Assembly (NCBI GenBank): GCA_002269645.1
Contig: NIVC01000215.1
Coordinates: forward strand, 720,086-784,085
DNA length: 64,000 nt
Direction of reading: 5' to 3'
Source: Macrostomum lignano
Taxonomy: Eukaryota
Shown here: positions 43,016 to 64,000 of the stretch, one piece after another
How the letters are laid out: the number at the start of each line of letters is the position of its first letter
Position numbering within the stretch: the stretch's first letter is position 1
Position numbers and translations under genes: made by a program
Notes under the pieces: model-generated
What the model was told of the DNA's origin: nothing
The model's input: only the letters and a program-made list of their open reading frames with translations
Database searches by the model: none

Positions 43016-43138
43016 AACAATCTGTCATAACTAATCCCAGTCAATCAGCCATTCTCTCTCTCGCCCGAATAGACAACCAGATCCCTGTTGCGCAACCACC
43101 TGGCTAGCCAGTTCGGGCCACTGTCCAGCCTCCACTTG

Positions 43139-46100: not shown

Positions 46101-47554
46101 GATTTTGGGATTGATGGATGATGGGATTTTGGGATTGATGGATGATGGGATTTTGGGATCGACGGGTGATGGGATTTTGGGATTGATGGATGATGGGATT
46201 TTGGGATTGACAAATGATGGGATTTTGGGATTGATGGATGATGGGATTTTGGGATTGACGGATAATGGGATTTTGGGATTGACGGATGATGGGATTTTGG
46301 GATTGATGGATGATGGGATTTTGGGATTGACGGATGATGGGATTTTGGGATTAACGGATGATGGAATTTTGGGATTGACGGGTGATGGGATTTTGGGACT
46401 AACGGATGATGGGATTTTATGATTGTTGAATGATGGGTTTTGGGGATTTGAGGATAAAGATTGGAGATTTGGGTTGAGATCTTTAGACTGGGTTTAGTTG
46501 CATTGCATTGTGCATTGGGTGATGGCGTGTTAGGCTGTTGCATGTTTAAGTAAGTCGATGTGGGTTCTCTCGGATCGTGTCTAGAACATGCACTGCCCGC
46601 TACCCCTGGCCATGGCCAGGTGGACGACCAGTGTCTGCAGGCGGTGAGCCAGCGCCTGTCCAGCAGTCTGCAGGCCCTGTGCCTCACCCACTGCACCCGG
46701 ATCAGCGCCTCAGGCTTTTGCACGCTCGCCGAGTGCTCCAAATTGCGTCGGCTCCGAGTTTCCTGCACGCAGTTCGACCTCGGCGTTTCAACCCGTCTGC
46801 CTCCGCCGGGACTGCAGGAGCTGGCGGTGGCCTCCTGCCACCGGCTGGGCCAGCCTGTGCAGCCCGACGTGCTGCGACGCCTCCTGGCACTTCGCCAACT
46901 CGTCAGTCTCGACCTGTCCTTCTGCGTCGGACTGCCGACTGCCGACGAGATTGCCGATTGTCTTCGTCGGACCGACAGCGTCGCCGCCGCTGCTAAGCTA
47001 ACCATCTACTGTAGGGGTGTCAGCGTGCCGATTGCGCAGGTGAGTACGATGAAGCTTTGGCGTCTCAGCCTCGGCAATCCCATTTAACCCGTTAAAAACG
47101 TTACCGTGACAAGAATCTTGTGACTTCTCTTCAATTTCTTGACTAACTGACGATCTGAATGCGGTTATTCTTACTGTTAAAGAGTCATACCTTATGAAAC
47201 TTTCAGGAGCAACTGGACTCGATGAACCTAAATAGGCCAGTCGAGTTTAACAACCATCGATATCCATCGTCGTCATTGTCTTGTACTCAGCAGGACGGCT
47301 GGTCCAATAGCGACTGGACCGCAACAGCTGCCCAGTCGGTGCGGCCAATGTGCCTGCCGACACACTGGGTTCACCCCACTGCCACCGAAGCAGCTCGCCA
47401 GCAGGACCTGGAAGGCGGCTACGAGCACTATGTGGGCGAGTTTGACCTCATAGAGGACGAGCACGACTTCGATTTTGACGATACGGACGATGAAGATTAT
47501 ACAGACGAAGACTTAATCGACTGGGTTGACGACGGATCAGATTTTAGCTATTGA
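43139..47554 (+). CDS. F-box/leucine-rich repeat (FBXL-like) protein, ~723 aa, 5 exons, acidic C-tail
   Basis: Phase-0 GT-AG exons 43139-43573, 44431-44922, 45361-45837, 46620-47039, 47207-47554. F-box across the first junction: [25 protein letters not shown]|EVCS. AMN1-type LRRs: [18 protein letters not shown]...[22 protein letters not shown]. The true start may lie in an upstream exon. Confidence 0.8.
43616..44392. repeat. ~28-bp minisatellite (CTCAGGTGAGAATCTCCCCAGAATGATT) in F-box intron 1
   Basis: Tandem copies with variable C-run. Confidence 0.95.
44952..45325. repeat. ~29-bp minisatellite (GTAGAGATGATGATGGATGCTGGGTGTCA) in F-box intron 2
   Basis: Tandem copies. Confidence 0.9.
45848..46422. 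repeat. 24-bp minisatellite (GATGATGGGATTTTGGGATTGATG) in F-box intron 3, ~24 copies
   Basis: Tandem copies; 8-aa period DDGILGLM. Confidence 0.95.
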
Positions 47555-48058
47555 TGACAGAAGGCTGCGATGATGCTGACAGCATGCTCTGTGTTGCATT
47601 TTGCTCACCCTTTAAACCAGTTTAAATATACAAACGTTAGAAACTATTAACTACGAATAACAACACTAAAAAGCTGCACTTCAAAAGTTTTATAATAGTA
47701 CAGACCACTTGAACTTTATATGCTTCCCGATATATATTGTAAACGTCATTGATAAACGCTTAAAACAGATCCGATACCTTATGTTACTTTAGTATAGAGC
47801 ATAGCTGACAGGCTACGATTTACGTACTGTATAAAATGCGTCTGCGCTTTACAGTGCAGAGCTGTAGAGACTGCAGTTGTGTAGTATGTAACTGAGTATG
47901 ATGCAACATTGATTAGTAAACGGCCAGCACATGTAATTACAGTTCACTATAAGTTGCAGTTTGATCAGCAGGCATCCAGCAACTCGTACAGGTCGGTAGG
48001 AGCGCCGCGATCAAGCCAGCATACAGGTTGGTATAGCGCGATCCGCAACGCACATCGA

Positions 48059-48181
48059 TCACTTCTTCTTATGACCGCCCTTGGCAGCGGCCTGCTCGCC
48101 CTCGGCTTTTTCCGGCTGCTGCTTGGCGTCCTTGCTGGCATCGGCGGCCTTCTTGTCGGCGGCGGCTTTCTTGGCAGGCAT
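48059..48181 (-). CDS. Microprotein A, 40 aa: MPAKKAAADKKAADASKDAKQQPEKAEGEQAAAKGGHKKK (copy 1)
   Basis: ATG in AAACATG context with an in-frame TAA 18 nt upstream; GC3-rich codons (GCC, AAG, GAC, CAG); frame-preserving homology to microprotein B. Not in the ORF track (<60 aa). Confidence 0.8.
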   Translation of the reverse strand: MPAKKAAADKKAADASKDAKQQPEKAEGEQAAAKGGHKKK

Positions 48182-48905
48182 GTTTGTCTGTTGAGATTAG
48201 GAAGCTGATGCTTGGAGCTGCAATTTGAGAAGCGAGCAGCTGAGGTTTGCAACGTGACCAACGTCAACTTCAAGTATAGCTAGCTGGCTGTACATCCTCA
48301 TTAGAAAAACTATCTAGATATATTCTCACGGGCACTTCTTCTTCTTTAACCGCTTATTGGAGCAGTGCAGTTCTACAAGGACCATTGGTGCATATCTAGC
48401 CTCTAGTTGGATGTGCTGGACAACGAAATCTAGAGGATGCTATATCAAGCCAAATACAAGTAATGCCCCCTTTCTCTGTCTGCAACTGCTGATCTAACAC
48501 AAAACATGCTAAGCATATAGGGAAACAGAGAGCATTTAAAGAACGAGAGCCGAAAACACCTGCTTGCTTTAAAAATACTGTCCAATATGTAATTTGGAAA
48601 TGCTACTGTAATTATTCTACAATCAAACAACTTTTTTCAATGGATCAATTTACAACTATAAGCTTTCGTCAGCACGTGAGTAAGGTTAGTACAGTACAGA
48701 ATACAGTAAGTAACCTTGCAGTTTCAGAGCTGGGTGCTGCGACTCTTTAGCCCCAACAAAGACGATACGCTAATGCGGACAGATTATAGTATACTGTATG
48801 TACAGGTATAGAGATAGCTCAGAGTTCCACTCAGTCACGCCAATAGTAGGCCTGGCTGTCATGCGGTGCAGAGCACACCTAACAATTGATCTCTCTGAAA
48901 TCGCA

Positions 48906-49046
48906 TCACTTCTTCTGACCGGCCTTGGCGGCAGCGCCACCAGCCTGCTGTTGTTGTTGCTGCTGCTTTTGCTGCTTGGCGTCCTTGTTGGCATCGGCTG
49001 CCTGCTGCTTGCCGGCTCCCTGCTGCTGGTTCTGCTTGGCTGGCAT
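48906..49046 (-). CDS. Microprotein B, 46 aa: MPAKQNQQQGAGKQQAADANKDAKQQKQQQQQQQAGGAAAKAGQKK (copy 1)
   Basis: First ATG within the TTG-started 67-aa ORF; A at -3; paralogous to A at both ends and in the core. Confidence 0.8.
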   Translation of the reverse strand: MPAKQNQQQGAGKQQAADANKDAKQQKQQQQQQQAGGAAAKAGQKK

Positions 49047-49928
49047 TCTGTGTTTTGCTTTTTGTGCTTGAGAGCTGCTTAGAGCTGCAATCGGGGCGAC
49101 AGTAAGCAAGTCATATAGTGCTCACACAACAACACACACACAGCAGCGAACGAAGTCTGTGTGCATCTTAATCAAGTAGCTAGCTACAATTTTTAAGTGC
49201 TACCAACCAGAGTATAACTTAGCTAACTACCAAAGGAATTTCACTCTTTCTACTCATACAACTAATGATCGACGCTGGTTGCATTGATAAACCTGATAAA
49301 CCTGACCAGCTCGCAAGGGATGCCTAGAAATTATACATTTACGAGCCGTACACTCCATTTCCACAGATTAGAACACAAAAGCCCAGTAGCTAGTTATTGC
49401 ACTACAAAATGTCTAACTCTTATACATAAACTGAAACAGCCCCACTGTCAGCCTGTGAGCGAGAGGCCCCTAAGCCTTGAGGAGCATGAAACTATATACG
49501 TGACTAGGAAGCAGCAAAAATATTGGTAAAAGTAGAGCTCAAGCCGAAAAACGATTGTTGGTTGTTGCAACAACTTTGTAAGTAACTGATGCACCCAGTA
49601 CAACAATGTAATTTACGACAAGTACATGACTGCCCATCAGAACAGAGCAGCTGGTACCATAGTATAGAGCATGGCTGACAGGCTACGATTTACGTACTGT
49701 ATAAAATGCGTCTGCGCTTTACAGTGCAGAGCTGTAGAGACTGCAGTTGTGTAGTATGTAACTGAGTATGATGCAACATTGATTAGTAAACGGCCAGCAC
49801 ATGTAATTACAGTTCACTATAAGTTGCAGTTTGATCAGCAGGCATCCAGCAACTCGTACAGGTCGGTAGGAGCGCCGCGATCAAGCCAGCATACAGGTTG
49901 GTATAGCGCGATCCGCAACGCACATCGA

Positions 49929-50051
49929 TCACTTCTTCTTATGACCGCCCTTGGCAGCGGCCTGCTCGCCCTCGGCTTTTTCCGGCTGCTGCTTGGCGTC
50001 CTTGCTGGCATCGGCGGCCTTCTTGTCGGCGGCGGCTTTCTTGGCAGGCAT
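49929..50051 (-). CDS. Microprotein A copy 2
   Basis: Same ORF as copy 1. Confidence 0.8.
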   Translation of the reverse strand: MPAKKAAADKKAADASKDAKQQPEKAEGEQAAAKGGHKKK

Positions 50052-50780
50052 GTTTGTCTGTTGAGATTAGGAAGCTGATGCTTGGAGCTGCAATTTGAGA
50101 AGCGAGCAGCTGAGGTTTGCAACGTGACCAACGTCAACTTCAAGTATAGCTAGCTGGCTGTACATCCTCATTAGAAAAACTATCTAGATATATTCTCACG
50201 GGCACTTCTTCTTCTTTAACCGCTTATTGGAGCAGTGCAGCTCTACAAGGACCATTGGTGCATATCTAGCCTCTAGTTGGATGTGCTGGACAACGAAATC
50301 TAGAGGATGCTATATCAAGCCAAATACAAGTAATGCCCCCTTTCTCTGTCTGCAACTGCTGATCTAACACAAAACATGCTAAGCATATAGGGAAACAGAG
50401 AGCATTTAAAGAACGAGAGCCGAAAACACCTGCTTGCTTTAAAAATACTGTCCAATATGTAATTTGGAAATGCTACTGTAATTATTCTACAATCAAACAA
50501 CTTTTTTCAATGGATCAATTTACAACTATAAGCTTTCGTCAGCACGTGAGTAAGGTTAGTACAGTACAGAATACAGTAAGTAACCTTGCAGTTTCAGAGC
50601 TGGGTGCTGCGACTCTTTAGCCCCAACAAAGACGATACGCTAATGCGGACAGATTATAGTATACTGTATGTACAGGTATAGAGATAGCTCAGAGTTCCAC
50701 TCAGTCACGCCAATAGTAGGCCTGGCTGTCATGCGGTGCAGAGCACACCTAACAATTGATCTCTCTGAAATCGCATCGCA

Positions 50781-50921
50781 TCACTTCTTCTGACCGGCCT
50801 TGGCGGCAGCGCCACCAGCCTGCTGTTGTTGTTGCTGCTGCTTTTGCTGCTTGGCGTCCTTGTTGGCATCGGCTGCCTGCTGCTTGCCGGCTCCCTGCTG
50901 CTGGTTCTGCTTGGCTGGCAT
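50781..50921 (-). CDS. Microprotein B copy 2
   Basis: Same ORF as copy 1. Confidence 0.8.
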   Translation of the reverse strand: MPAKQNQQQGAGKQQAADANKDAKQQKQQQQQQQAGGAAAKAGQKK

Positions 50922-51805
50922 TCTGTGTTTTGCTTTTTGTGCTTGAGAGCTGCTTAGAGCTGCAATCGGGGCGACAGTAAGCAAGTCATATAGTGCTCAC
51001 ACAACAACACACACACACAGCAGCGAACGAAGTCTGTGTGCATCTTAATCAAGTAGCTAGCTACAATTTTTAAGTGCTACCAACCAGAGTATAACTTAGC
51101 TAACTACCAAAGGAATTTCACTCTTTCTACTCATACAACTAATGATCGACGCTGGTTGCATTGATAAACCTGATAAACCTGACCAGCTCGCAAGGGATGC
51201 CTAGAAATTATACATTTACGAGCCGTACACTCCATTTCCACAGATTAGAACACAAAAGCCCAGTAGCTAGTTATTGCACTACAAAATGTCTAACTCTTAT
51301 ACATAAACTGAAACAGCCCCACTGTCAGCCTGTGAGCGAGAGGCCCCTAAGCCTTGAGGAGCATGAAACTATATACGTGACTAGGAAGCAGCAAAAATAT
51401 TGGTAAAAGTAGAGCTCAAGCCGAAAAACGATTGTTGGTTGTTGCAACAACTTTGTAAGTAACTGATGCACCCAGTACAACAATGTAATTTACGACAAGT
51501 ACATGACTGCCCATCAGAACAGAGCAGCTGGTACCATAGTATAGAGCATGGCTGACAGGCTACGATTTACGTACTGTATAAAATGCGTCTGCGCTTTACA
51601 GTGCAGAGCTGTAGAGACTGCAGTTGTGTAGTATGTAACTGAGTATGATGCAACATTGATTAGTAAACGGCCAGCACATGTAATTACAGTTCACTATAAG
51701 TTGCAGTTTGATCAGCAGGCATCCAGCAACTCGTACAGGTCGGTAGGAGCGCCGCGATCAAGCCAGCATACAGGTTGGTATAGCGCGATCCGCAACGCAC
51801 ATCGA

Positions 51806-51928
51806 TCACTTCTTCTTATGACCGCCCTTGGCAGCGGCCTGCTCGCCCTCGGCTTTTTCCGGCTGCTGCTTGGCGTCCTTGCTGGCATCGGCGGCCTTCT
51901 TGTCGGCGGCGGCTTTCTTGGCAGGCAT
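51806..51928 (-). CDS. Microprotein A copy 3
   Basis: Same ORF as copy 1. Confidence 0.8.
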   Translation of the reverse strand: MPAKKAAADKKAADASKDAKQQPEKAEGEQAAAKGGHKKK

Positions 51929-52657
51929 GTTTGTCTGTTGAGATTAGGAAGCTGATGCTTGGAGCTGCAATTTGAGAAGCGAGCAGCTGAGGTTTGCAAC
52001 GTGACCAACGTCAACTTCAAGTATAGCTAGCTGGCTGTACATCCTCATTAGAAAAACTATCTAGATATATTCTCACGGGCACTTCTTCTTCTTTAACCGC
52101 TTATTGGAGCAGTGCAGCTCTACAAGGACCATTGGTGCATATCTAGCCTCTAGTTGGATGTGCTGGACAACGAAATCTAGAGGATGCTATATCAAGCCAA
52201 ATACAAGTAATGCCCCCTTTCTCTGTCTGCAACTGCTGATCTAACACAAAACATGCTAAGCATATAGGGAAACAGAGAGCATTTAAAGAACGAGAGCCGA
52301 AAACACCTGCTTGCTTTAAAAATACTGTCCAATATGTAATTTGGAAATGCTACTGTAATTATTCTACAATCAAACAACTTTTTTCAATGGATCAATTTAC
52401 AACTATAAGCTTTCGTCAGCACGTGAGTAAGGTTAGTACAGTACAGAATACAGTAAGTAACCTTGCAGTTTCAGAGCTGGGTGCTGCGACTCTTTAGCCC
52501 CAACAAAGACGATACGCTAATGCGGACAGATTATAGTATACTGTATGTACAGGTATAGAGATAGCTCAGAGTTCCACTCAGTCACGCCAATAGTAGGCCT
52601 GGCTGTCATGCGGTGCAGAGCACACCTAACAATTGATCTCTCTGAAATCGCATCGCA

Positions 52658-52798
52658 TCACTTCTTCTGACCGGCCTTGGCGGCAGCGCCACCAGCCTGC
52701 TGTTGTTGTTGCTGCTGCTTTTGCTGCTTGGCGTCCTTGTTGGCATCGGCTGCCTGCTGCTTGCCGGCTCCCTGCTGCTGGTTCTGCTTGGCTGGCAT
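52658..52798 (-). CDS. Microprotein B copy 3
   Basis: Same ORF as copy 1. Confidence 0.8.
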   Translation of the reverse strand: MPAKQNQQQGAGKQQAADANKDAKQQKQQQQQQQAGGAAAKAGQKK

Positions 52799-53682
52799 TC
52801 TGTGTTTTGCTTTTTGTGCTTGAGAGCTGCTTAGAGCTGCAATCGGGGCGACAGTAAGCAAGTCATATAGTGCTCACACAACAACACACACACACAGCAG
52901 CGAACGAAGTCTGTGTGCATCTTAATCAAGTAGCTAGCTACAATTTTTAAGTGCTACCAACCAGAGTATAACTTAGCTAACTACCAAAGGAATTTCACTC
53001 TTTCTACTCATACAACTAATGATCGACGCTGGTTGCATTGATAAACCTGATAAACCTGACCAGCTCGCAAGGGATGCCTAGAAATTATACATTTACGAGC
53101 CGTACACTCCATTTCCACAGATTAGAACACAAAAGCCCAGTAGCTAGTTATTGCACTACAAAATGTCTAACTCTTATACATAAACTGAAACAGCCCCACT
53201 GTCAGCCTGTGAGCGAGAGGCCCCTAAGCCTTGAGGAGCATGAAACTATATACGTGACTAGGAAGCAGCAAAAATATTGGTAAAAGTAGAGCTCAAGCCG
53301 AAAAACGATTGTTGGTTGTTGCAACAACTTTGTAAGTAACTGATGCACCCAGTACAACAATGTAATTTACGACAAGTACATGACTGCCCATCAGAACAGA
53401 GCAGCTGGTACCATAGTATAGAGCATGGCTGACAGGCTACGATTTACGTACTGTATAAAATGCGTCTGCGCTTTACAGTGCAGAGCTGTAGAGACTGCAG
53501 TTGTGTAGTATGTAACTGAGTATGATGCAACATTGATTAGTAAACGGCCAGCACATGTAATTACAGTTCACTATAAGTTGCAGTTTGATCAGCAGGCATC
53601 CAGCAACTCGTACAGGTCGGTAGGAGCGCCGCGATCAAGCCAGCATACAGGTTGGTATAGCGCGATCCGCAACGCACATCGA

Positions 53683-53805
53683 TCACTTCTTCTTATGACC
53701 GCCCTTGGCAGCGGCCTGCTCGCCCTCGGCTTTTTCCGGCTGCTGCTTGGCGTCCTTGCTGGCATCGGCGGCCTTCTTGTCGGCGGCGGCTTTCTTGGCA
53801 GGCAT
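53683..53805 (-). CDS. Microprotein A copy 4
   Basis: Same ORF as copy 1. Confidence 0.8.
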   Translation of the reverse strand: MPAKKAAADKKAADASKDAKQQPEKAEGEQAAAKGGHKKK

Positions 53806-54534
53806 GTTTGTCTGTTGAGATTAGGAAGCTGATGCTTGGAGCTGCAATTTGAGAAGCGAGCAGCTGAGGTTTGCAACGTGACCAACGTCAACTTCAAGTA
53901 TAGCTAGCTGGCTGTACATCCTCATTAGAAAAACTATCTAGATATATTCTCACGGGCACTTCTTCTTCTTTAACCGCTTATTGGAGCAGTGCAGCTCTAC
54001 AAGGACCATTGGTGCATATCTAGCCTCTAGTTGGATGTGCTGGACAACGAAATCTAGAGGATGCTATATCAAGCCAAATACAAGTAATGCCCCCTTTCTC
54101 TGTCTGCAACTGCTGATCTAACACAAAACATGCTAAGCATATAGGGAAACAGAGAGCATTTAAAGAACGAGAGCCGAAAACACCTGCTTGCTTTAAAAAT
54201 ACTGTCCAATATGTAATTTGGAAATGCTACTGTAATTATTCTACAATCAAACAACTTTTTTCAATGGATCAATTTACAACTATAAGCTTTCGTCAGCACG
54301 TGAGTAAGGTTAGTACAGTACAGAATACAGTAAGTAACCTTGCAGTTTCAGAGCTGGGTGCTGCGACTCTTTAGCCCCAACAAAGACGATACGCTAATGC
54401 GGACAGATTATAGTATACTGTATGTACAGGTATAGAGATAGCTCAGAGTTCCACTCAGTCACGCCAATAGTAGGCCTGGCTGTCATGCGGTGCAGAGCAC
54501 ACCTAACAATTGATCTCTCTGAAATCGCATCGCA

Positions 54535-54675
54535 TCACTTCTTCTGACCGGCCTTGGCGGCAGCGCCACCAGCCTGCTGTTGTTGTTGCTGCTGCTTTTG
54601 CTGCTTGGCGTCCTTGTTGGCATCGGCTGCCTGCTGCTTGCCGGCTCCCTGCTGCTGGTTCTGCTTGGCTGGCAT
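54535..54675 (-). CDS. Microprotein B copy 4
   Basis: Same ORF as copy 1. Confidence 0.8.
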   Translation of the reverse strand: MPAKQNQQQGAGKQQAADANKDAKQQKQQQQQQQAGGAAAKAGQKK

Positions 54676-55557
54676 TCTGTGTTTTGCTTTTTGTGCTTGA
54701 GAGCTGCTTAGAGCTGCAATCGGGGCGACAGTAAGCAAGTCATATAGTGCTCACACAACAACACACACACAGCAGCGAACGAAGTCTGTGTGCATCTTAA
54801 TCAAGTAGCTAGCTACAATTTTTAAGTGCTACCAACCAGAGTATAACTTAGCTAACTACCAAAGGAATTTCACTCTTTCTACTCATACAACTAATGATCG
54901 ACGCTGGTTGCATTGATAAACCTGATAAACCTGACCAGCTCGCAAGGGATGCCTAGAAATTATACATTTACGAGCCGTACACTCCATTTCCACAGATTAG
55001 AACACAAAAGCCCAGTAGCTAGTTATTGCACTACAAAATGTCTAACTCTTATACATAAACTGAAACAGCCCCACTGTCAGCCTGTGAGCGAGAGGCCCCT
55101 AAGCCTTGAGGAGCATGAAACTATATACGTGACTAGGAAGCAGCAAAAATATTGGTAAAAGTAGAGCTCAAGCCGAAAAACGATTGTTGGTTGTTGCAAC
55201 AACTTTGTAAGTAACTGATGCACCCAGTACAACAATGTAATTTACGACAAGTACATGACTGCCCATCAGAACAGAGCAGCTGGTACCATAGTATAGAGCA
55301 TGGCTGACAGGCTACGATTTACGTACTGTATAAAATGCGTCTGCGCTTTACAGTGCAGAGCTGTAGAGACTGCAGTTGTGTAGTATGTAACTGAGTATGA
55401 TGCAACATTGATTAGTAAACGGCCAGCACATGTAATTACAGTTCACTATAAGTTGCAGTTTGATCAGCAGGCATCCAGCAACTCGTACAGGTCGGTAGGA
55501 GCGCCGCGATCAAGCCAGCATACAGGTTGGTATAGCGCGATCCGCAACGCACATCGA

Positions 55558-55680
55558 TCACTTCTTCTTATGACCGCCCTTGGCAGCGGCCTGCTCGCCC
55601 TCGGCTTTTTCCGGCTGCTGCTTGGCGTCCTTGCTGGCATCGGCGGCCTTCTTGTCGGCGGCGGCTTTCTTGGCAGGCAT
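55558..55680 (-). CDS. Microprotein A copy 5
   Basis: Same ORF as copy 1. Confidence 0.8.
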   Translation of the reverse strand: MPAKKAAADKKAADASKDAKQQPEKAEGEQAAAKGGHKKK

Positions 55681-56409
55681 GTTTGTCTGTTGAGATTAGG
55701 AAGCTGATGCTTGGAGCTGCAATTTGAGAAGCGAGCAGCTGAGGTTTGCAACGTGACCAACGTCAACTTCAAGTATAGCTAGCTGGCTGTACATCCTCAT
55801 TAGAAAAACTATCTAGATATATTCTCACGGGCACTTCTTCTTCTTTAACCGCTTATTGGAGCAGTGCAGCTCTACAAGGACCATTGGTGCATATCTAGCC
55901 TCTAGTTGGATGTGCTGGACAACGAAATCTAGAGGATGCTATATCAAGCCAAATACAAGTAATGCCCCCTTTCTCTGTCTGCAACTGCTGATCTAACACA
56001 AAACATGCTAAGCATATAGGGAAACAGAGAGCATTTAAAGAACGAGAGCCGAAAACACCTGCTTGCTTTAAAAATACTGTCCAATATGTAATTTGGAAAT
56101 GCTACTGTAATTATTCTACAATCAAACAACTTTTTTCAATGGATCAATTTACAACTATAAGCTTTCGTCAGCACGTGAGTAAGGTTAGTACAGTACAGAA
56201 TACAGTAAGTAACCTTGCAGTTTCAGAGCTGGGTGCTGCGACTCTTTAGCCCCAACAAAGACGATACGCTAATGCGGACAGATTATAGTATACTGTATGT
56301 ACAGGTATAGAGATAGCTCAGAGTTCCACTCAGTCACGCCAATAGTAGGCCTGGCTGTCATGCGGTGCAGAGCACACCTAACAATTGATCTCTCTGAAAT
56401 CGCATCGCA

Positions 56410-56550
56410 TCACTTCTTCTGACCGGCCTTGGCGGCAGCGCCACCAGCCTGCTGTTGTTGTTGCTGCTGCTTTTGCTGCTTGGCGTCCTTGTTGGCATCG
56501 GCTGCCTGCTGCTTGCCGGCTCCCTGCTGCTGGTTCTGCTTGGCTGGCAT
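56410..56550 (-). CDS. Microprotein B copy 5
   Basis: Same ORF as copy 1. Confidence 0.8.
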   Translation of the reverse strand: MPAKQNQQQGAGKQQAADANKDAKQQKQQQQQQQAGGAAAKAGQKK

Positions 56551-57432
56551 TCTGTGTTTTGCTTTTTGTGCTTGAGAGCTGCTTAGAGCTGCAATCGGGG
56601 CGACAGTAAGCAAGTCATATAGTGCTCACACAACAACACACACACAGCAGCGAACGAAGTCTGTGTGCATCTTAATCAAGTAGCTAGCTACAATTTTTAA
56701 GTGCTACCAACCAGAGTATAACTTAGCTAACTACCAAAGGAATTTCACTCTTTCTACTCATACAACTAATGATCGACGCTGGTTGCATTGATAAACCTGA
56801 TAAACCTGACCAGCTCGCAAGGGATGCCTAGAAATTATACATTTACGAGCCGTACACTCCATTTCCACAGATTAGAACACAAAAGCCCAGTAGCTAGTTA
56901 TTGCACTACAAAATGTCTAACTCTTATACATAAACTGAAACAGCCCCACTGTCAGCCTGTGAGCGAGAGGCCCCTAAGCCTTGAGGAGCATGAAACTATA
57001 TACGTGACTAGGAAGCAGCAAAAATATTGGTAAAAGTAGAGCTCAAGCCGAAAAACGATTGTTGGTTGTTGCAACAACTTTGTAAGTAACTGATGCACCC
57101 AGTACAACAATGTAATTTACGACAAGTACATGACTGCCCATCAGAACAGAGCAGCTGGTACCATAGTATAGAGCATGGCTGACAGGCTACGATTTACGTA
57201 CTGTATAAAATGCGTCTGCGCTTTACAGTGCAGAGCTGTAGAGACTGCAGTTGTGTAGTATGTAACTGAGTATGATGCAACATTGATTAGTAAACGGCCA
57301 GCACATGTAATTACAGTTCACTATAAGTTGCAGTTTGATCAGCAGGCATCCAGCAACTCGTACAGGTCGGTAGGAGCGCCGCGATCAAGCCAGCATACAG
57401 GTTGGTATAGCGCGATCCGCAACGCACATCGA

Positions 57433-57555
57433 TCACTTCTTCTTATGACCGCCCTTGGCAGCGGCCTGCTCGCCCTCGGCTTTTTCCGGCTGCTGCTTGG
57501 CGTCCTTGCTGGCATCGGCGGCCTTCTTGTCGGCGGCGGCTTTCTTGGCAGGCAT
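57433..57555 (-). CDS. Microprotein A copy 6
   Basis: Same ORF as copy 1. Confidence 0.8.
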   Translation of the reverse strand: MPAKKAAADKKAADASKDAKQQPEKAEGEQAAAKGGHKKK

Positions 57556-58284
57556 GTTTGTCTGTTGAGATTAGGAAGCTGATGCTTGGAGCTGCAATTT
57601 GAGAAGCGAGCAGCTGAGGTTTGCAACGTGACCAACGTCAACTTCAAGTATAGCTAGCTGGCTGTACATCCTCATTAGAAAAACTATCTAGATATATTCT
57701 CACGGGCACTTCTTCTTCTTTAACCGCTTATTGGAGCAGTGCAGCTCTACAAGGACCATTGGTGCATATCTAGCCTCTAGTTGGATGTGCTGGACAACGA
57801 AATCTAGAGGATGCTATATCAAGCCAAATACAAGTAATGCCCCCTTTCTCTGTCTGCAACTGCTGATCTAACACAAAACATGCTAAGCATATAGGGAAAC
57901 AGAGAGCATTTAAAGAACGAGAGCCGAAAACACCTGCTTGCTTTAAAAATACTGTCCAATATGTAATTTGGAAATGCTACTGTAATTATTCTACAATCAA
58001 ACAACTTTTTTCAATGGATCAATTTACAACTATAAGCTTTCGTCAGCACGTGAGTAAGGTTAGTACAGTACAGAATACAGTAAGTAACCTTGCAGTTTCA
58101 GAGCTGGGTGCTGCGACTCTTTAGCCCCAACAAAGACGATACGCTAATGCGGACAGATTATAGTATACTGTATGTACAGGTATAGAGATAGCTCAGAGTT
58201 CCACTCAGTCACGCCAATAGTAGGCCTGGCTGTCATGCGGTGCAGAGCACACCTAACAATTGATCTCTCTGAAATCGCATCGCA

Positions 58285-58425
58285 TCACTTCTTCTGACCG
58301 GCCTTGGCGGCAGCGCCACCAGCCTGCTGTTGTTGTTGCTGCTGCTTTTGCTGCTTGGCGTCCTTGTTGGCATCGGCTGCCTGCTGCTTGCCGGCTCCCT
58401 GCTGCTGGTTCTGCTTGGCTGGCAT
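58285..58425 (-). CDS. Microprotein B copy 6
   Basis: Same ORF as copy 1. Confidence 0.8.
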   Translation of the reverse strand: MPAKQNQQQGAGKQQAADANKDAKQQKQQQQQQQAGGAAAKAGQKK

Positions 58426-59307
58426 TCTGTGTTTTGCTTTTTGTGCTTGAGAGCTGCTTAGAGCTGCAATCGGGGCGACAGTAAGCAAGTCATATAGTGC
58501 TCACACAACAACACACACACAGCAGCGAACGAAGTCTGTGTGCATCTTAATCAAGTAGCTAGCTACAATTTTTAAGTGCTACCAACCAGAGTATAACTTA
58601 GCTAACTACCAAAGGAATTTCACTCTTTCTACTCATACAACTAATGATCGACGCTGGTTGCATTGATAAACCTGATAAACCTGACCAGCTCGCAAGGGAT
58701 GCCTAGAAATTATACATTTACGAGCCGTACACTCCATTTCCACAGATTAGAACACAAAAGCCCAGTAGCTAGTTATTGCACTACAAAATGTCTAACTCTT
58801 ATACATAAACTGAAACAGCCCCACTGTCAGCCTGTGAGCGAGAGGCCCCTAAGCCTTGAGGAGCATGAAACTATATACGTGACTAGGAAGCAGCAAAAAT
58901 ATTGGTAAAAGTAGAGCTCAAGCCGAAAAACGATTGTTGGTTGTTGCAACAACTTTGTAAGTAACTGATGCACCCAGTACAACAATGTAATTTACGACAA
59001 GTACATGACTGCCCATCAGAACAGAGCAGCTGGTACCATAGTATAGAGCATGGCTGACAGGCTACGATTTACGTACTGTATAAAATGCGTCTGCGCTTTA
59101 CAGTGCAGAGCTGTAGAGACTGCAGTTGTGTAGTATGTAACTGAGTATGATGCAACATTGATTAGTAAACGGCCAGCACATGTAATTACAGTTCACTATA
59201 AGTTGCAGTTTGATCAGCAGGCATCCAGCAACTCGTACAGGTCGGTAGGAGCGCCGCGATCAAGCCAGCATACAGGTTGGTATAGCGCGATCCGCAACGC
59301 ACATCGA

Positions 59308-59430
59308 TCACTTCTTCTTATGACCGCCCTTGGCAGCGGCCTGCTCGCCCTCGGCTTTTTCCGGCTGCTGCTTGGCGTCCTTGCTGGCATCGGCGGCCTT
59401 CTTGTCGGCGGCGGCTTTCTTGGCAGGCAT
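59308..59430 (-). CDS. Microprotein A copy 7
   Basis: Same ORF as copy 1. Confidence 0.8.
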   Translation of the reverse strand: MPAKKAAADKKAADASKDAKQQPEKAEGEQAAAKGGHKKK

Positions 59431-60159
59431 GTTTGTCTGTTGAGATTAGGAAGCTGATGCTTGGAGCTGCAATTTGAGAAGCGAGCAGCTGAGGTTTGCA
59501 ACGTGACCAACGTCAACTTCAAGTATAGCTAGCTGGCTGTACATCCTCATTAGAAAAACTATCTAGATATATTCTCACGGGCACTTCTTCTTCTTTAACC
59601 GCTTATTGGAGCAGTGCAGCTCTACAAGGACCATTGGTGCATATCTAGCCTCTAGTTGGATGTGCTGGACAACGAAATCTAGAGGATGCTATATCAAGCC
59701 AAATACAAGTAATGCCCCCTTTCTCTGTCTGCAACTGCTGATCTAACACAAAACATGCTAAGCATATAGGGAAACAGAGAGCATTTAAAGAACGAGAGCC
59801 GAAAACACCTGCTTGCTTTAAAAATACTGTCCAATATGTAATTTGGAAATGCTACTGTAATTATTCTACAATCAAACAACTTTTTTCAATGGATCAATTT
59901 ACAACTATAAGCTTTCGTCAGCACGTGAGTAAGGTTAGTACAGTACAGAATACAGTAAGTAACCTTGCAGTTTCAGAGCTGGGTGCTGCGACTCTTTAGC
60001 CCCAACAAAGACGATACGCTAATGCGGACAGATTATAGTATACTGTATGTACAGGTATAGAGATAGCTCAGAGTTCCACTCAGTCACGCCAATAGTAGGC
60101 CTGGCTGTCATGCGGTGCAGAGCACACCTAACAATTGATCTCTCTGAAATCGCATCGCA

Positions 60160-60300
60160 TCACTTCTTCTGACCGGCCTTGGCGGCAGCGCCACCAGCCT
60201 GCTGTTGTTGTTGCTGCTGCTTTTGCTGCTTGGCGTCCTTGTTGGCATCGGCTGCCTGCTGCTTGCCGGCTCCCTGCTGCTGGTTCTGCTTGGCTGGCAT
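60160..60300 (-). CDS. Microprotein B copy 7
   Basis: Same ORF as copy 1. Confidence 0.8.
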   Translation of the reverse strand: MPAKQNQQQGAGKQQAADANKDAKQQKQQQQQQQAGGAAAKAGQKK

Positions 60301-61184
60301 TCTGTGTTTTGCTTTTTGTGCTTGAGAGCTGCTTAGAGCTGCAATCGGGGCGACAGTAAGCAAGTCATATAGTGCTCACACAACAACACACACACACAGC
60401 AGCGAACGAAGTCTGTGTGCATCTTAATCAAGTAGCTAGCTACAATTTTTAAGTGCTACCAACCAGAGTATAACTTAGCTAACTACCAAAGGAATTTCAC
60501 TCTTTCTACTCATACAACTAATGATCGACGCTGGTTGCATTGATAAACCTGATAAACCTGACCAGCTCGCAAGGGATGCCTAGAAATTATACATTTACGA
60601 GCCGTACACTCCATTTCCACAGATTAGAACACAAAAGCCCAGTAGCTAGTTATTGCACTACAAAATGTCTAACTCTTATACATAAACTGAAACAGCCCCA
60701 CTGTCAGCCTGTGAGCGAGAGGCCCCTAAGCCTTGAGGAGCATGAAACTATATACGTGACTAGGAAGCAGCAAAAATATTGGTAAAAGTAGAGCTCAAGC
60801 CGAAAAACGATTGTTGGTTGTTGCAACAACTTTGTAAGTAACTGATGCACCCAGTACAACAATGTAATTTACGACAAGTACATGACTGCCCATCAGAACA
60901 GAGCAGCTGGTACCATAGTATAGAGCATGGCTGACAGGCTACGATTTACGTACTGTATAAAATGCGTCTGCGCTTTACAGTGCAGAGCTGTAGAGACTGC
61001 AGTTGTGTAGTATGTAACTGAGTATGATGCAACATTGATTAGTAAACGGCCAGCACATGTAATTACAGTTCACTATAAGTTGCAGTTTGATCAGCAGGCA
61101 TCCAGCAACTCGTACAGGTCGGTAGGAGCGCCGCGATCAAGCCAGCATACAGGTTGGTATAGCGCGATCCGCAACGCACATCGA

Positions 61185-61307
61185 TCACTTCTTCTTATGA
61201 CCGCCCTTGGCAGCGGCCTGCTCGCCCTCGGCTTTTTCCGGCTGCTGCTTGGCGTCCTTGCTGGCATCGGCGGCCTTCTTGTCGGCGGCGGCTTTCTTGG
61301 CAGGCAT
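61185..61307 (-). CDS. Microprotein A copy 8
   Basis: Same ORF as copy 1. Confidence 0.8.
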   Translation of the reverse strand: MPAKKAAADKKAADASKDAKQQPEKAEGEQAAAKGGHKKK

Positions 61308-62036
61308 GTTTGTCTGTTGAGATTAGGAAGCTGATGCTTGGAGCTGCAATTTGAGAAGCGAGCAGCTGAGGTTTGCAACGTGACCAACGTCAACTTCAAG
61401 TATAGCTAGCTGGCTGTACATCCTCATTAGAAAAACTATCTAGATATATTCTCACGGGCACTTCTTCTTCTTTAACCGCTTATTGGAGCAGTGCAGCTCT
61501 ACAAGGACCATTGGTGCATATCTAGCCTCTAGTTGGATGTGCTGGACAACGAAATCTAGAGGATGCTATATCAAGCCAAATACAAGTAATGCCCCCTTTC
61601 TCTGTCTGCAACTGCTGATCTAACACAAAACATGCTAAGCATATAGGGAAACAGAGAGCATTTAAAGAACGAGAGCCGAAAACACCTGCTTGCTTTAAAA
61701 ATACTGTCCAATATGTAATTTGGAAATGCTACTGTAATTATTCTACAATCAAACAACTTTTTTCAATGGATCAATTTACAACTATAAGCTTTCGTCAGCA
61801 CGTGAGTAAGGTTAGTACAGTACAGAATACAGTAAGTAACCTTGCAGTTTCAGAGCTGGGTGCTGCGACTCTTTAGCCCCAACAAAGACGATACGCTAAT
61901 GCGGACAGATTATAGTATACTGTATGTACAGGTATAGAGATAGCTCAGAGTTCCACTCAGTCACGCCAATAGTAGGCCTGGCTGTCATGCGGTGCAGAGC
62001 ACACCTAACAATTGATCTCTCTGAAATCGCATCGCA

Positions 62037-62177
62037 TCACTTCTTCTGACCGGCCTTGGCGGCAGCGCCACCAGCCTGCTGTTGTTGTTGCTGCTGCTTT
62101 TGCTGCTTGGCGTCCTTGTTGGCATCGGCTGCCTGCTGCTTGCCGGCTCCCTGCTGCTGGTTCTGCTTGGCTGGCAT
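62037..62177 (-). CDS. Microprotein B copy 8
   Basis: Same ORF as copy 1. Confidence 0.8.
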   Translation of the reverse strand: MPAKQNQQQGAGKQQAADANKDAKQQKQQQQQQQAGGAAAKAGQKK

Positions 62178-63059
62178 TCTGTGTTTTGCTTTTTGTGCTT
62201 GAGAGCTGCTTAGAGCTGCAATCGGGGCGACAGTAAGCAAGTCATATAGTGCTCACACAACAACACACACACAGCAGCGAACGAAGTCTGTGTGCATCTT
62301 AATCAAGTAGCTAGCTACAATTTTTAAGTGCTACCAACCAGAGTATAACTTAGCTAACTACCAAAGGAATTTCACTCTTTCTACTCATACAACTAATGAT
62401 CGACGCTGGTTGCATTGATAAACCTGATAAACCTGACCAGCTCGCAAGGGATGCCTAGAAATTATACATTTACGAGCCGTACACTCCATTTCCACAGATT
62501 AGAACACAAAAGCCCAGTAGCTAGTTATTGCACTACAAAATGTCTAACTCTTATACATAAACTGAAACAGCCCCACTGTCAGCCTGTGAGCGAGAGGCCC
62601 CTAAGCCTTGAGGAGCATGAAACTATATACGTGACTAGGAAGCAGCAAAAATATTGGTAAAAGTAGAGCTCAAGCCGAAAAACGATTGTTGGTTGTTGCA
62701 ACAACTTTGTAAGTAACTGATGCACCCAGTACAACAATGTAATTTACGACAAGTACATGACTGCCCATCAGAACAGAGCAGCTGGTACCATAGTATAGAG
62801 CATGGCTGACAGGCTACGATTTACGTACTGTATAAAATGCGTCTGCGCTTTACAGTGCAGAGCTGTAGAGACTGCAGTTGTGTAGTATGTAACTGAGTAT
62901 GATGCAACATTGATTAGTAAACGGCCAGCACATGTAATTACAGTTCACTATAAGTTGCAGTTTGATCAGCAGGCATCCAGCAACTCGTACAGGTCGGTAG
63001 GAGCGCCGCGATCAAGCCAGCATACAGGTTGGTATAGCGCGATCCGCAACGCACATCGA

Positions 63060-63182
63060 TCACTTCTTCTTATGACCGCCCTTGGCAGCGGCCTGCTCGC
63101 CCTCGGCTTTTTCCGGCTGCTGCTTGGCGTCCTTGCTGGCATCGGCGGCCTTCTTGTCGGCGGCGGCTTTCTTGGCAGGCAT
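63060..63182 (-). CDS. Microprotein A copy 9
   Basis: Same ORF as copy 1. Confidence 0.8.
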   Translation of the reverse strand: MPAKKAAADKKAADASKDAKQQPEKAEGEQAAAKGGHKKK

Positions 63183-63909
63183 GTTTGTCTGTTGAGATTA
63201 GGAAGCTGATGCTTGGAGCTGCAATTTGAGAAGCGAGCAGCTGAGGTTTGCAACGTGACCAACGTCAACTTCAAGTATAGCTAGCTGGCTGTACATCCTC
63301 ATTAGAAAAACTATCTAGATATATTCTCACGGGCACTTCTTCTTCTTTAACCGCTTATTGGAGCAGTGCAGCTCTACAAGGACCATTGGTGCATATCTAG
63401 CCTCTAGTTGGATGTGCTGGACAACGAAATCTAGAGGATGCTATATCAAGCCAAATACAAGTAATGCCCCTTTCTCTGTCTGCAACTGCTGATCTAACAC
63501 AAAACATGCTAAGCATATAGGGAAACAGAGAGCATTTAAAGAACGAGAGCCGAAAACACCTGCTTGCTTTAAAAATACTGTCCAATATGTAATTTGGAAA
63601 TGCTACTGTAATTATTCTACAATCAAACAACTTTTTTCAATGGATCAATTTACAACTATAAGCTTTCGTCAGCACGTGAGTAAGGTTAGTACAGTACAGA
63701 ATACAGTAAGTAACCTTGCAGTTTCAGAGCTGGGTGCTGCGACTCTTTAGCCCCAACAAAGACGATACGCTAATGCGGACAGATTATAGTATACTGTATG
63801 TACAGGTATAGAGATAGCTCAGAGTTCCACTCAGTCACGCCAATAGTAGGCCTGGCTGTCATGCGGTGCAGAGCACACCTAACAATTGATCTCTCTGAAT
63901 CGCATCGCA

Positions 63910-64000
63910 TCACTTCTTCTGACCGGCCTTGGCGGCAGCGCCACCAGCCTGCTGTTGTTGTTGCTGCTGCTTTTGCTGCTTGGCGTCCTTGTTGGCATCG
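63910..64000 (-). CDS. Microprotein B copy 9 (3' part; start lies beyond the window)
   Basis: Same sequence as the C-terminal part of copy 1. Confidence 0.75.
   Translation of the reverse strand, partial: DANKDAKQQKQQQQQQQAGGAAAKAGQKK

What the first reader, a model, noticed from the sequence alone, without database searches (positions are those of the whole stretch)
47790..64000. Tandemly amplified two-microprotein cassette (at least 9 copies each): candidate undescribed system
Seen: a ~1.875-kb unit repeated head-to-tail at least 8.6 times. It encodes no recognisable histone, rRNA, 5S or snRNA, only two short minus-strand ORFs: A (40 aa, 11 Lys, net about +5) and B (46 aa, 16 Gln, 8 Lys, net about +6). 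Both are intact in every copy, lack Cys, aromatic and large aliphatic residues and have no signal peptide. Established: fixed-stoichiometry tandem cassettes typify products needed in bulk (histones, rDNA). Inference: an abundant, intrinsically disordered basic peptide pair made 1:1, e.g. a sperm chromatin/structural, stress-protective hydrophilin or cross-linked scaffold component. I recognise no family.
Basis: partly seen in the sequence, partly recalled or inferred. Interest (0 to 1): 0.9.

Follow-up and report, generated by a model that had tools for sequence, protein, structure and literature searches.

The report
Tandem microprotein gene array in Macrostomum
A flatworm (Macrostomum) genome carries long head-to-tail arrays of a 1.9-kb unit holding two related genes for tiny (40 and 46 residue) lysine/alanine/glutamine-rich proteins of unknown function; the genes look real and transcribed, exist in GenBank only as garbled "hypothetical proteins", and sit just downstream of the ribosome-associated microprotein gene TMA7.

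Summary
From about 47782 to the window end there are 8 full copies and one 0.65 copy of a 1870-1877 bp unit, about 99.9% identical. ORF A (40 aa) occurs 9 times. ORF B (46 aa) occurs 8 times, plus a ninth copy cut by the window edge. Intactness in every copy proves nothing, because the copies barely differ.

The evidence for real genes is different. A and B are paralogues. Inside the unit only the two ORFs and a 16-nt TTGCAG acceptor motif upstream of each ATG are conserved. Codon usage matches a bona fide gene in the window, and dN/dS between A and B is about 0.35. Four Macrostomum lignano contigs (GCA_002269645.1) carry the same arrays. Their RNA-seq-derived gene models use exactly this acceptor. 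B is nucleotide-identical in two array types that differ by 3% elsewhere.

In M. lignano an intact TMA7 gene and a non-coding leader exon lie just upstream of the array. This suggests polycistronic transcription resolved by cis- or SL trans-splicing.

No known family matches: not Pfam, not PDB, not TMA7. No homologue was found outside Macrostomum.

It is one duplicated orphan microprotein gene amplified for dosage, not a two-part "system". Function is unknown and interest is moderate.

The parts
47782..64000 (-). Tandem array: 8 full units of 1870-1877 bp plus a 1218-bp partial unit, running off the window end. In the sense (minus) direction this is the 3' end of the array.
   Evidence: unit starts on the + strand at 47782, 49652, 51529, 53406, 55281, 57156, 59031, 60908, 62783
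48059..48181 (-). ORF A copy 1 (40 aa + stop)
49929..50051 (-). ORF A copy 2
51806..51928 (-). ORF A copy 3
53683..53805 (-). ORF A copy 4
55558..55680 (-). ORF A copy 5
57433..57555 (-). ORF A copy 6
59308..59430 (-). ORF A copy 7
61185..61307 (-). ORF A copy 8
63060..63182 (-). ORF A copy 9
48906..49046 (-). ORF B copy 1 (46 aa + stop)
50781..50921 (-). ORF B copy 2
52658..52798 (-). ORF B copy 3
54535..54675 (-). ORF B copy 4
56410..56550 (-). ORF B copy 5
58285..58425 (-). ORF B copy 6
60160..60300 (-). ORF B copy 7
62037..62177 (-). ORF B copy 8
63910..64000 (-). ORF B copy 9, cut by the window end (residues 18-46 and the stop are present)
50079..50094 (-). Conserved splice-acceptor motif ATTGCAG|CTCCAAGCA; the exon starts 36 nt upstream of the A ATG. 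Representative copy; the others are at 48209, 51956, 53833, 55708, 57583, 59458, 61335 and 63210.
   Evidence: It matches the M. lignano trans-splice acceptor motif [T/C]TNCAG (PMC8629364). Its use in front of A is inferred.
50951..50966 (-). Conserved splice-acceptor motif ATTGCAG|CTCTAAGCA; the exon starts 38 nt upstream of the B ATG. Representative copy; the others are at 49076, 52828, 54705, 56580, 58455, 60330 and 62207.
   Evidence: Its use as an acceptor is shown by GenBank models PAA49765.1 and PAA92363.1, and by the 58-aa model whose 5'-partial CDS begins at the first full codon after the AG.
49686..49704 (-). Splice donor ACA|GTACGT, 232 nt downstream of the A stop. It is joined to the next B acceptor (intron about 613 nt) in M. 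lignano model PAA49765.1. Representative copy; the others are at 47816, 51563, 53440, 55315, 57190, 59065, 60942 and 62817.

Best explanation
The array is a dosage amplification of one lineage-restricted (so far Macrostomum-only) microprotein gene. That gene first duplicated into two paralogues, B (46 aa) and A (40 aa). The B-A pair, a 1.9-kb unit, was then amplified head to tail and is kept homogeneous by concerted evolution.

Both genes are read from the window's minus strand. Each ORF is preceded at 36-38 nt by a conserved TTGCAG acceptor.

Shown for M. lignano, by its RNA-seq-derived gene models: the acceptor in front of B is used, and transcripts reach it in three ways.
(i) From a non-coding leader exon about 1.5 kb upstream of the array and about 0.6 kb downstream of TMA7.
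(ii) From a GT donor in the 3' region of the preceding A.
(iii) As a transcript 5' end lying exactly at the acceptor, which is what a spliced-leader trans-spliced mRNA looks like after leader trimming.

Inferred: the array is transcribed as a long polycistronic precursor from the promoter in front of the leader exon. That precursor is cut into A, B or A-B mRNAs by cis- and SL trans-splicing.

The products are about 4-5 kDa, basic (pI about 10) and extremely hydrophilic. They have no signal peptide and no hydrophobic core, and are predicted to be a single helix or disordered.

Inferred with low confidence: they act in bulk inside the cell as soluble polycationic, hydrophilin-type peptides, most plausibly on RNA or ribosomes. 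The only grounds are their charge and their position directly downstream of TMA7, itself a 64-aa Lys-rich ribosome-associated protein ending in GKK.

My confidence applies to 'real, transcribed, coding, amplified paralogous microprotein genes processed through these acceptors'. For the biochemical role I would give no more than about 0.2.
For: - Array: its existence and homogeneity are shown.
- Paralogy: within the unit the only self-similarity is ORF against ORF (73% over 111 nt) plus the 16-nt acceptor motif. The proteins are 59% identical, with the start, the AADA[SN]KDAKQQ core and the AAAKxGxKK-stop aligned. The Smith-Waterman score is 90 against 41.7 +/- 6.0 for shuffles, 0 of 5000 reaching it.
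- Coding signature: dN/dS is about 0.35. Differences by codon position are 11, 7 and 14.
- Composition: the ORFs are GC islands (62-63% against 45.7% for the unit). GC3 is 72-78%, and the GCC/AAG/CAG preferences match the PKA-R gene in the same window.
- Not RNA structure: there is no excess folding energy (z = +0.9).
- Independent assembly: four M. lignano contigs end in the same arrays. Units are 98.5-99.7% identical to the window on two contigs and 97.1% on the other two.
- Constraint between array types: substitutions run at 2.0% outside the ORFs and 0.4% inside (1 in 264 nt; binomial P = 0.038). The only ORF indel is 3 nt and in frame. All 28 B copies in the window and in L001-L003 are nucleotide-identical. 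The neighbouring TMA7 CDS shows 1 difference in 195 nt, and the single-copy flank is 91-95% identical.
- Transcription and splicing: GenBank proteins PAA49765.1, PAA92363.1 and PAA46468.1 contain B or A. Their junctions fall exactly at GT donors and at the TTGCAG acceptor. These models come from stranded RNA-seq transcriptional units cut at experimentally mapped trans-splice and poly(A) sites (PMC5730564).
- Operon criteria: the acceptor fits the published trans-splice motif, and the 694- and 847-nt spacings fall under the <1 kb operon criterion of PMC8629364.
- TMA7: an intact copy lies upstream of the array in three loci.
- Fold: one helix is predicted for each peptide, with pLDDT 73 and 76.
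Against: - I could inspect no RNA-seq, SL-read, poly(A)-site, Ribo-seq or peptide data directly. Transcription is inferred from other people's gene models, and those models are visibly confused by the repeats (ranges spanning 9-22 kb, junk N-terminal extensions).
- The sense strand of the unit has no AATAAA or ATTAAA, although TMA7 next door has a canonical AATAAA. So 3'-end formation is unexplained.
- Conservation is shown only between paralogues and between homeologous arrays of one species. The statistics are modest (P about 0.04-0.06). Both changes seen in A alter the protein.
- No homologue was found outside M. lignano among 1.84 billion cluster representatives, or in viral, prokaryotic or metagenome contigs. 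ORFs this short are rarely called, so this absence is weak evidence either way.
- A few copies in the PacBio-based M. lignano assembly are frameshifted or carry D14Y.
- A and B show no similarity to TMA7 beyond composition, and the helices are not amphipathic. The functional guess rests on charge and neighbourhood alone.
Confidence: 0.6

Rival explanations
1. The array is a transcribed satellite or long non-coding RNA. It is a 1.9-kb satellite that happens to be transcribed and spliced. The two GC-rich segments are conserved for an RNA- or DNA-level reason, or only by gene conversion. The ORFs are not translated into functional peptides.
For: The genome around the array is extremely rich in tandem repeats. 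M. lignano is reported as 15% simple and tandem repeats (PMC5730564). Several other frames across the A and B segments are also open. No poly(A) signal is seen. No homologue exists outside the species. The only two changes between A alleles are non-synonymous.
Against: The conserved block between A and B starts at the ATG and ends a few nucleotides after the stop. Both keep ATG-CCN-GCC-AAG at the start and AAG-AAG-TGA at the end. Indels between the paralogues and between alleles preserve the frame. dN/dS is about 0.35, and codon usage matches a real gene. There is no thermodynamic sign of RNA structure. The antisense hydrophobic ORF has an ATG in the A segment only.
Confidence: 0.2
2. A and B are not stand-alone microproteins. 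They are exons of one or more larger spliced, repetitive proteins, as the 87-, 100-, 124- and 153-aa GenBank models would imply.
For: Annotated M. lignano products are longer than A or B and span several units. The frame upstream of the B ATG is open back to the acceptor.
Against: Both ORFs end in a conserved in-frame TGA. The frame upstream of the A ATG has a stop (LQASAS*). The extra N-terminal parts of the models come from the 3' region of A or from the leader exon, are not conserved between A and B, and look non-coding. PAA46468.1 owes its length to a 1-nt deletion. An annotation pipeline that selects long ORFs would produce exactly these artefacts (my inference).
Confidence: 0.07
3. The array is an assembly artefact: a single-copy or low-copy locus inflated by the assembler.
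For: The copies are nearly identical, and the array runs off the window and off every M. lignano contig that holds it.
Against: An independent assembly (GCA_002269645.1) has the same arrays on four contigs, with up to 11.5 units on one. There are two sequence types 3% apart, unit-length polymorphisms (the GATGC and AC indels) and two different array/flank junctions.
Confidence: 0.02

Closest known systems
Spliced-leader trans-spliced operons and polycistronic tandem arrays (M. lignano operons, PMC8629364; nematode operons; trypanosomatid tandem gene arrays - the last two from general knowledge)
   Same: Co-oriented genes lie less than 1 kb apart. A [T/C]TNCAG acceptor lies shortly upstream of each ORF. 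Annotated transcripts cross from one gene into the next. One gene model carries the '.g3' suffix that this annotation gives to genes within a transcriptional unit.
   Different: Published M. lignano operons have 2-9 different genes. This would be dozens of alternating copies of two paralogous 40-46 codon ORFs. Trans-splicing at these sites has not been seen directly here. No poly(A) signal is recognisable between the genes.
Dosage tandem arrays of small abundant proteins (histone gene clusters; winter flounder type I antifreeze protein arrays - general knowledge)
   Same: The repeat is head to tail, kilobase-sized and homogenised. It encodes short basic or Ala-rich helical proteins. It has fixed gene stoichiometry, and concerted evolution keeps copies more than 99% identical.
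   Different: There is no sequence relation to either. The 11-residue Thr periodicity of type I AFPs is absent, and there is no histone fold. Abundance of the products has not been shown.
TMA7 (Pfam PF09072), a 64-aa Lys-rich translation-machinery-associated protein
   Same: Both are tiny, intronless, very hydrophilic Lys-rich ORFs ending in G-x-K-K. TMA7 sits directly upstream of the array, in the same orientation, in all three M. lignano loci where the 5' flank is visible.
   Different: A and B do not match PF09072 even at E <= 10, although HMMER's filters drop most matches above about 0.1. BLASTP gives no alignment, and Smith-Waterman scores are no better than shuffles. The TMA7 region and the unit share no DNA similarity.
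Hydrophilins / LEA-like and 'Hero'-type heat-soluble proteins (definition from general knowledge: Gly >6%, very high hydrophilicity)
   Same: The composition fits: Gly 7.5% and 10.9%, GRAVY -1.48 and -1.81, no hydrophobic core and no signal peptide.
   Different: A and B match no LEA or other Pfam family. Stress induction or protective activity is unknown. Hydrophilin is a compositional class, not a homologous family.
Polycistronic smORF genes (tarsal-less/polished rice/mille-pattes of insects - general knowledge)
   Same: Several very short related ORFs lie on one transcription unit.
   Different: The insect peptides are 11-32 aa and lie on one short mRNA from a single-copy gene. Here there is a genomic tandem array of 1.9-kb units with splice sites between the ORFs.

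Membership tests
TMA7 (PF09072) | Significant match to the family profile or to a member sequence | tested here: not met
   Pfam scan of A and B: 0 families at E <= 10. The neighbouring M. lignano ORF scores 72.5 bits, E = 4.9e-20. BLASTP of A against Mlig TMA7 gives no alignment. Shuffle test P = 0.28-0.86.
TMA7 (PF09072) | Association with ribosomes or the translation machinery | not testable with these tools
   This needs polysome or ribosome co-sedimentation, or cryo-EM.
SL trans-spliced operon (as defined for M. lignano in PMC8629364) | Adjacent same-strand genes less than 1 kb apart | tested here: met
   B stop to A acceptor is 694 nt. A stop to the next B acceptor is 847 nt. The criterion is quoted.
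SL trans-spliced operon (as defined for M. lignano in PMC8629364) | [T/C]TNCAG acceptor at the 5' end of the downstream gene's first exon | tested here: met
   TTGCAG lies 36 nt (A) and 38 nt (B) upstream of the ATG and is conserved between the paralogues. The motif is given.
SL trans-spliced operon (as defined for M. lignano in PMC8629364) | Reads carrying the 35-nt spliced leader joined at that acceptor | tested here: inconclusive
   No read data are available. Indirect evidence: the 58-aa GenBank model's 5'-partial CDS starts at the first full codon after the AG, and the pipeline cuts transcripts at mapped trans-splice sites. The SL sequence itself is absent from the window, as expected.
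Hydrophilin (compositional class) | Gly >6% and very high hydrophilicity | tested here: met
   A: Gly 3/40, GRAVY -1.48. B: Gly 5/46, GRAVY -1.81. The thresholds are recalled from the literature and were not re-read here.
Hydrophilin (compositional class) | Accumulation under, or protection against, water-deficit stress | not testable with these tools
   This needs expression and in vitro protection assays.
Histone H1 / sperm nuclear basic proteins / protamines | Match to linker-histone or protamine families; very high Arg/Lys content | tested here: not met
   No Pfam or PDB match. There is no Arg. Lys is 27% (A) and 17% (B), and net charge is only +5 to +6.
Type I antifreeze proteins | Ala above about 60% with 11-residue Thr periodicity | tested here: not met
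   Ala is 30% (A) and 24% (B), and there is no Thr. The family definition is from general knowledge.
Known structured RNA genes usually found in tandem arrays (5S, snRNA, SL RNA, rRNA) | Rfam covariance-model match | tested here: not met
   No hit at gathering score in the whole window. In a permissive scan of one unit the only hit is a 16-bit chance match. No tRNA. No SL sequence.

The most novel reading that the evidence does not exclude
A and B are a previously unrecognised class of translation-associated microproteins. On this reading they are co-transcribed with TMA7 from one polycistronic unit and released by spliced-leader trans-splicing. They are amplified to dozens of copies because they are needed at roughly ribosome-level abundance, for example as ribosome or RNA coating or storage factors. 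This would be the first tandemly amplified microprotein operon described in an animal.
Probability: 0.12. Interest if true: 0.75.

Novelty: new variant of a known kind. Interest (0 to 1): 0.5.

Why it matters
Microproteins under 50 residues are systematically missed. TransDecoder (named) picks long ORFs, and I infer this is why the annotation kept only artefactually lengthened versions of A and B. As a result, what may be one of the most highly amplified protein-coding loci of a regeneration model organism sits in GenBank as three garbled hypothetical proteins.

If A and B are translated, they are an orphan family with an unusual genomic design: a paralogous pair, amplified in tandem, apparently fed by an upstream leader exon, with alternative cis- and trans-splicing at a conserved acceptor. 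That makes the locus a convenient natural case for studying how SL trans-splicing resolves very long repetitive precursors, and how dosage is set by copy number. The adjacency to TMA7 gives a concrete, cheap hypothesis to test.

If they are not translated, the locus is a spliced, transcribed satellite with two oddly constrained segments. That would be of interest mainly to Macrostomum genome annotators.

Tried and rejected
- Exact-sequence look-ups of A, B and the PKA-R ORF in the 153-billion-gene index found nothing on record.
- A word-indexed homology search with A alone found no candidates. The same index with a 5-sequence profile returned only the three M. lignano entries.
- Pfam and PDB searches with A or B found nothing.
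- Back-translated pattern scans of viral, prokaryotic-genome and JGI metagenome contigs produced pattern matches, but none was confirmed by tblastn.
- Bacterial promoter and terminator scans were uninformative for a eukaryote.
- A structured-RNA explanation was rejected: z = +0.9 and no Rfam match.
- Derivation from TMA7 was tested at protein and DNA level and is not supported.
- Amphipathic-helix character is not above shuffles.
- Fold search was not run, because a lone helix gives meaningless matches.
- Literature searches for the locus tags, for peptide strings, for Macrostomum satellites and for Macrostomum microproteins returned nothing relevant.
- The locus tags do not occur in the held supplements of PMC5816591 or PMC5730564.
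- A search for TMA7 ribosome structures returned nothing useful, and Mlig TMA7 has no PDB match.
- Pfam on the neighbouring ORFs gave no hits.
- I could not reconstruct the 124-aa and 153-aa multi-unit gene models and left them aside.

Full report
**1. The observation.** Direct-repeat analysis finds families of 8-9 copies spaced 1870-1877 bp apart from 47782 to the window end. Aligning the copies gives eight full units and a 1218-bp partial one. Only 13 alignment columns vary: four at the array edge, one SNP, one 1-nt deletion, a 5-bp GATGC indel just 3' of the B stop, and an AC dinucleotide indel. None lies inside ORF A or B.

An ATG-only ORF census shows A (40 aa) nine times and B (46 aa) eight times, all identical. 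The ninth B is cut by the window end. No Rfam family, tRNA or SL RNA is present. The description is therefore accurate.

However, about 17 other ORFs of 25 aa or more are equally 'intact in every copy'. The copies are about 99.9% identical, so that argument has no force.

**2. Are the ORFs genes?** The decisive observation is internal. A self-comparison of one unit finds only two similar places: ORF A against ORF B (73% over 111 nt), and a 16-nt motif ATTGCAGCTC[C/T]AAGCA about 30-45 nt upstream of each ATG. Forced alignments of the upstream and downstream 250 nt show nothing else.

- The proteins align over their whole length at 59% identity. They share the start MPAK, the core AADA[S/N]KDAKQQ and the tail AAAKxGxKK-stop. 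The score is 8 sd above shuffles, with 0 of 5000 shuffles reaching it.
- A and B are thus old paralogues whose flanks have diverged beyond recognition, while the ORF from ATG to TGA has been kept.
- Gaps are whole codons. dN/dS is about 0.35.
- The ORFs are GC islands: 62-63% against 45.7% for the unit.
- Their GCC/AAG/CAG codon preferences and their GC3 (72-78%) match those of the PKA regulatory-subunit gene in the same window (GC3 82%).
- The segments fold no better than shuffled sequence (z = +0.9).
- The antisense hydrophobic ORF has an ATG only in the A segment.

**3. Organism and independent copies.** A 393-aa intronless PKA RII ORF at 19362-20543 has its best matches in Macrostomum lignano, at 84%.

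A profile of A+B was scanned against 1.84 billion cluster representatives. It found three proteins and no others. All three are M. lignano 'hypothetical proteins' from assembly GCA_002269645.1: PAA49765.1 (Mlig030344g1), PAA92363.1 (Mlig001540g3, partial) and PAA46468.1 (Mlig029044g1).

Their contigs, plus a fourth found with the 58-aa form of B, all end in the same array.
- On NIVC01004846.1 and NIVC01001226.1 the units are 98.5-99.7% identical to the window.
- On NIVC01003793.1 and NIVC01000056.1 they are 97.1% identical. NIVC01000056.1 holds at least 11.5 units.

The window is therefore M. lignano or a very close relative. The array is not an assembly artefact, and every copy count is a lower bound.

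**4. Constraint between the two array types.** Between the window type and the 97% type I count 33 substitutions in the 1613 non-ORF positions (2.0%), but one in the 264 ORF positions (0.4%). The binomial P is 0.038, or 0.059 if indel events are included.
- The only ORF indel is an in-frame GCC (Ala) insertion in A. With S16N it gives a 41-aa allele.
- B is nucleotide-identical in all 28 complete copies in the window and in L001-L003. The five B copies of L004 encode the same protein.
- For scale, the adjacent TMA7 CDS differs at 1 of 195 positions, and the single-copy flank is 91-95% identical.
- A few M. lignano copies carry a 1-nt deletion or D14Y. These may be real decay or long-read errors.

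This evidence is consistent with purifying selection, but it is statistically modest.

**5. Transcription and splicing.** The GenBank products are informative precisely because they are wrong.

- PAA49765.1 is a junk ORF from the 3' region of A (MLHH...ILY) joined to LSSFQAQKAKHR + B. In the genome the junction runs from ACA|GTACGT, 232 nt after the A stop, to ATTGCAG|CTCTAAGC, 38 nt before the B ATG. The intron is about 613 nt.
- PAA92363.1 joins a 123-nt exon with donor T|GTAAGT, lying 1.5 kb upstream of the array, to the same acceptor.
- A 58-aa model starts at the first full codon after that AG.
- PAA46468.1 is A run into the +1 frame by a 1-nt deletion.

According to the assembly paper, these models derive from RNA-seq transcriptional units (merged with an option that leaves unstranded transcripts out). 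The units were cut at experimentally mapped trans-splice and poly(A) sites, and ORFs were called afterwards by TransDecoder (PMC5730564). I infer that this ORF calling is why only lengthened versions of such short ORFs survived.

The acceptor fits the published M. lignano trans-splice motif [T/C]TNCAG. The intergenic distances of 694 and 847 nt fall under that paper's 1-kb operon criterion (PMC8629364).

If the 35-nt leader, which ends in ATG, is added, its ATG is closed after 2 codons before B and after 7 codons before A. This follows directly from the sequence.

What is shown: sense-strand transcription, and use of the B acceptor in cis. What is inferred: SL trans-splicing at both acceptors, and a polycistronic precursor.

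One thing is unexplained. The sense strand of the unit has no AATAAA or ATTAAA. There is only AATATA about 100 nt before the A acceptor, and two TTTAAA. TMA7 next door has a canonical AATAAA. This leaves open a dicistronic A-intron-B mRNA that ends shortly before the next A acceptor.

**6. Context outside the window.** In the sense direction the window shows only the 3' end of the array. It abuts, convergently, an unidentified ORF with an acidic tail at 47222-47554.

The 5' end is visible in three M. lignano loci. It consists of an intact, intronless 64-aa TMA7 gene (PF09072, E = 4.9e-20), then its poly(A) signal, then about 520 nt of AT-rich DNA, then the leader exon, then a 1.2-1.8 kb intron, then the first B.

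TMA7 resembles A and B in size, charge and its G-x-K-K end. There is no similarity beyond composition, and the DNA shares nothing. So A and B cannot be filed under TMA7. The adjacency is a lead, not evidence of function.

**7. The products.** A and B are 4.1 and 4.8 kDa, with pI 9.8 and 10.2 and GRAVY -1.5 and -1.8. They have no hydrophobic segment, and therefore no signal peptide or membrane anchor.
- AlphaFold2 from the single sequence predicts one helix each, at moderate confidence: A residues 3-33, pLDDT 73; B residues 8-42, pLDDT 76.
- The helices are not amphipathic.
- The peptides meet the compositional definition of hydrophilins but match no LEA, histone, protamine or other family.

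I commit to 'soluble intracellular polycationic peptides needed in bulk, possibly on RNA or ribosomes', with low confidence.

**8. Verdict.** The finding is real and more than chance, and the ORFs are probably genes. It is one orphan microprotein gene, duplicated and then amplified, not a two-component system. It is already present, mis-annotated, in GenBank.

The design resembles known things: dosage arrays and SL operons. Its particular combination has no described counterpart that I could find: alternating paralogous 40-46 codon genes in long arrays, fed by a leader exon next to TMA7. Interest is moderate, at 0.5. It would rise sharply with evidence of translation and of ribosome association.

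Noticed in passing
L004:7523-7717; L002:9185-9379; L001:6090-6284 (M. lignano contigs; outside the window): An intact intronless TMA7 gene (PF09072) with a canonical AATAAA lies about 1.9 kb upstream of the array and about 2.3-2.6 kb upstream of the first B ATG. It has the same orientation as the array in all three loci where the array's 5' flank is visible. It is followed by a 123-nt non-coding leader exon that is spliced to the B acceptor.
   Followed up: yes
window 19362-20543 (+): Intronless 393-aa cAMP-dependent protein kinase type II regulatory subunit ORF. Its best hit is an M. lignano protein at only 84% identity, and no exact match is on record. It may be an unannotated paralogue or a retrocopy.
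   Followed up: partly
window 5355-46448: A mosaic of more than 25 minisatellite arrays, with periods of 12-53 nt and up to about 110 copies. It includes (ATAG)368 at 23919-25389. Many arrays create long spurious ORFs.
   Followed up: no
window 30807-31725 (-): Two overlapping ORFs, one with the motif HSLRRGGATWAA. To me this reads like the catalytic region of a tyrosine recombinase of a Crypton/DIRS-type element. There is no Pfam hit at E <= 0.01.
   Followed up: partly
window, +1 frame of each A and B copy, e.g. 49835-50011 (-) and 50729-50869 (-): Arg/Pro/Ser-rich overlapping ORFs (MPARTPSSSRKKPRASRPLPRAV..., MPTRTPSSKSSS...) start at a shared internal ATG. They are probably a by-product of the GCC/AAG/CAG codon composition. 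GenBank PAA46468.1 is A fused to this frame by a 1-nt deletion.
   Followed up: partly
window 47222-47554 (+): A convergent neighbouring ORF ends in a strongly acidic tail ([32 protein letters not shown]) 230 bp from the array edge. Neither it nor the ORFs upstream of it (43088-47087) has a Pfam match.
   Followed up: partly
window 50770-50774 and 51007-51008; L002 units: Unit-length polymorphisms. A GATGC copy directly after the B stop is missing in window copy 1 and in the 97% array type, and an (AC)n run varies by one repeat. These are useful markers for unequal exchange within the array.
   Followed up: no
L004:9626 versus L002:11630 / L001:8535: The array begins at different unit phases in the homeologous loci: position 198 versus 281 of the unit in sense orientation. 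The upstream flanks are otherwise 91-96% identical.
   Followed up: partly
L002:17552-27111 and L004:13042-17653: GenBank gene models of 153 and 124 aa span 4.6-9.6 kb of the array. I could not reconstruct their exon structure. They are probably multi-mapping artefacts but might record further splice forms.
   Followed up: no
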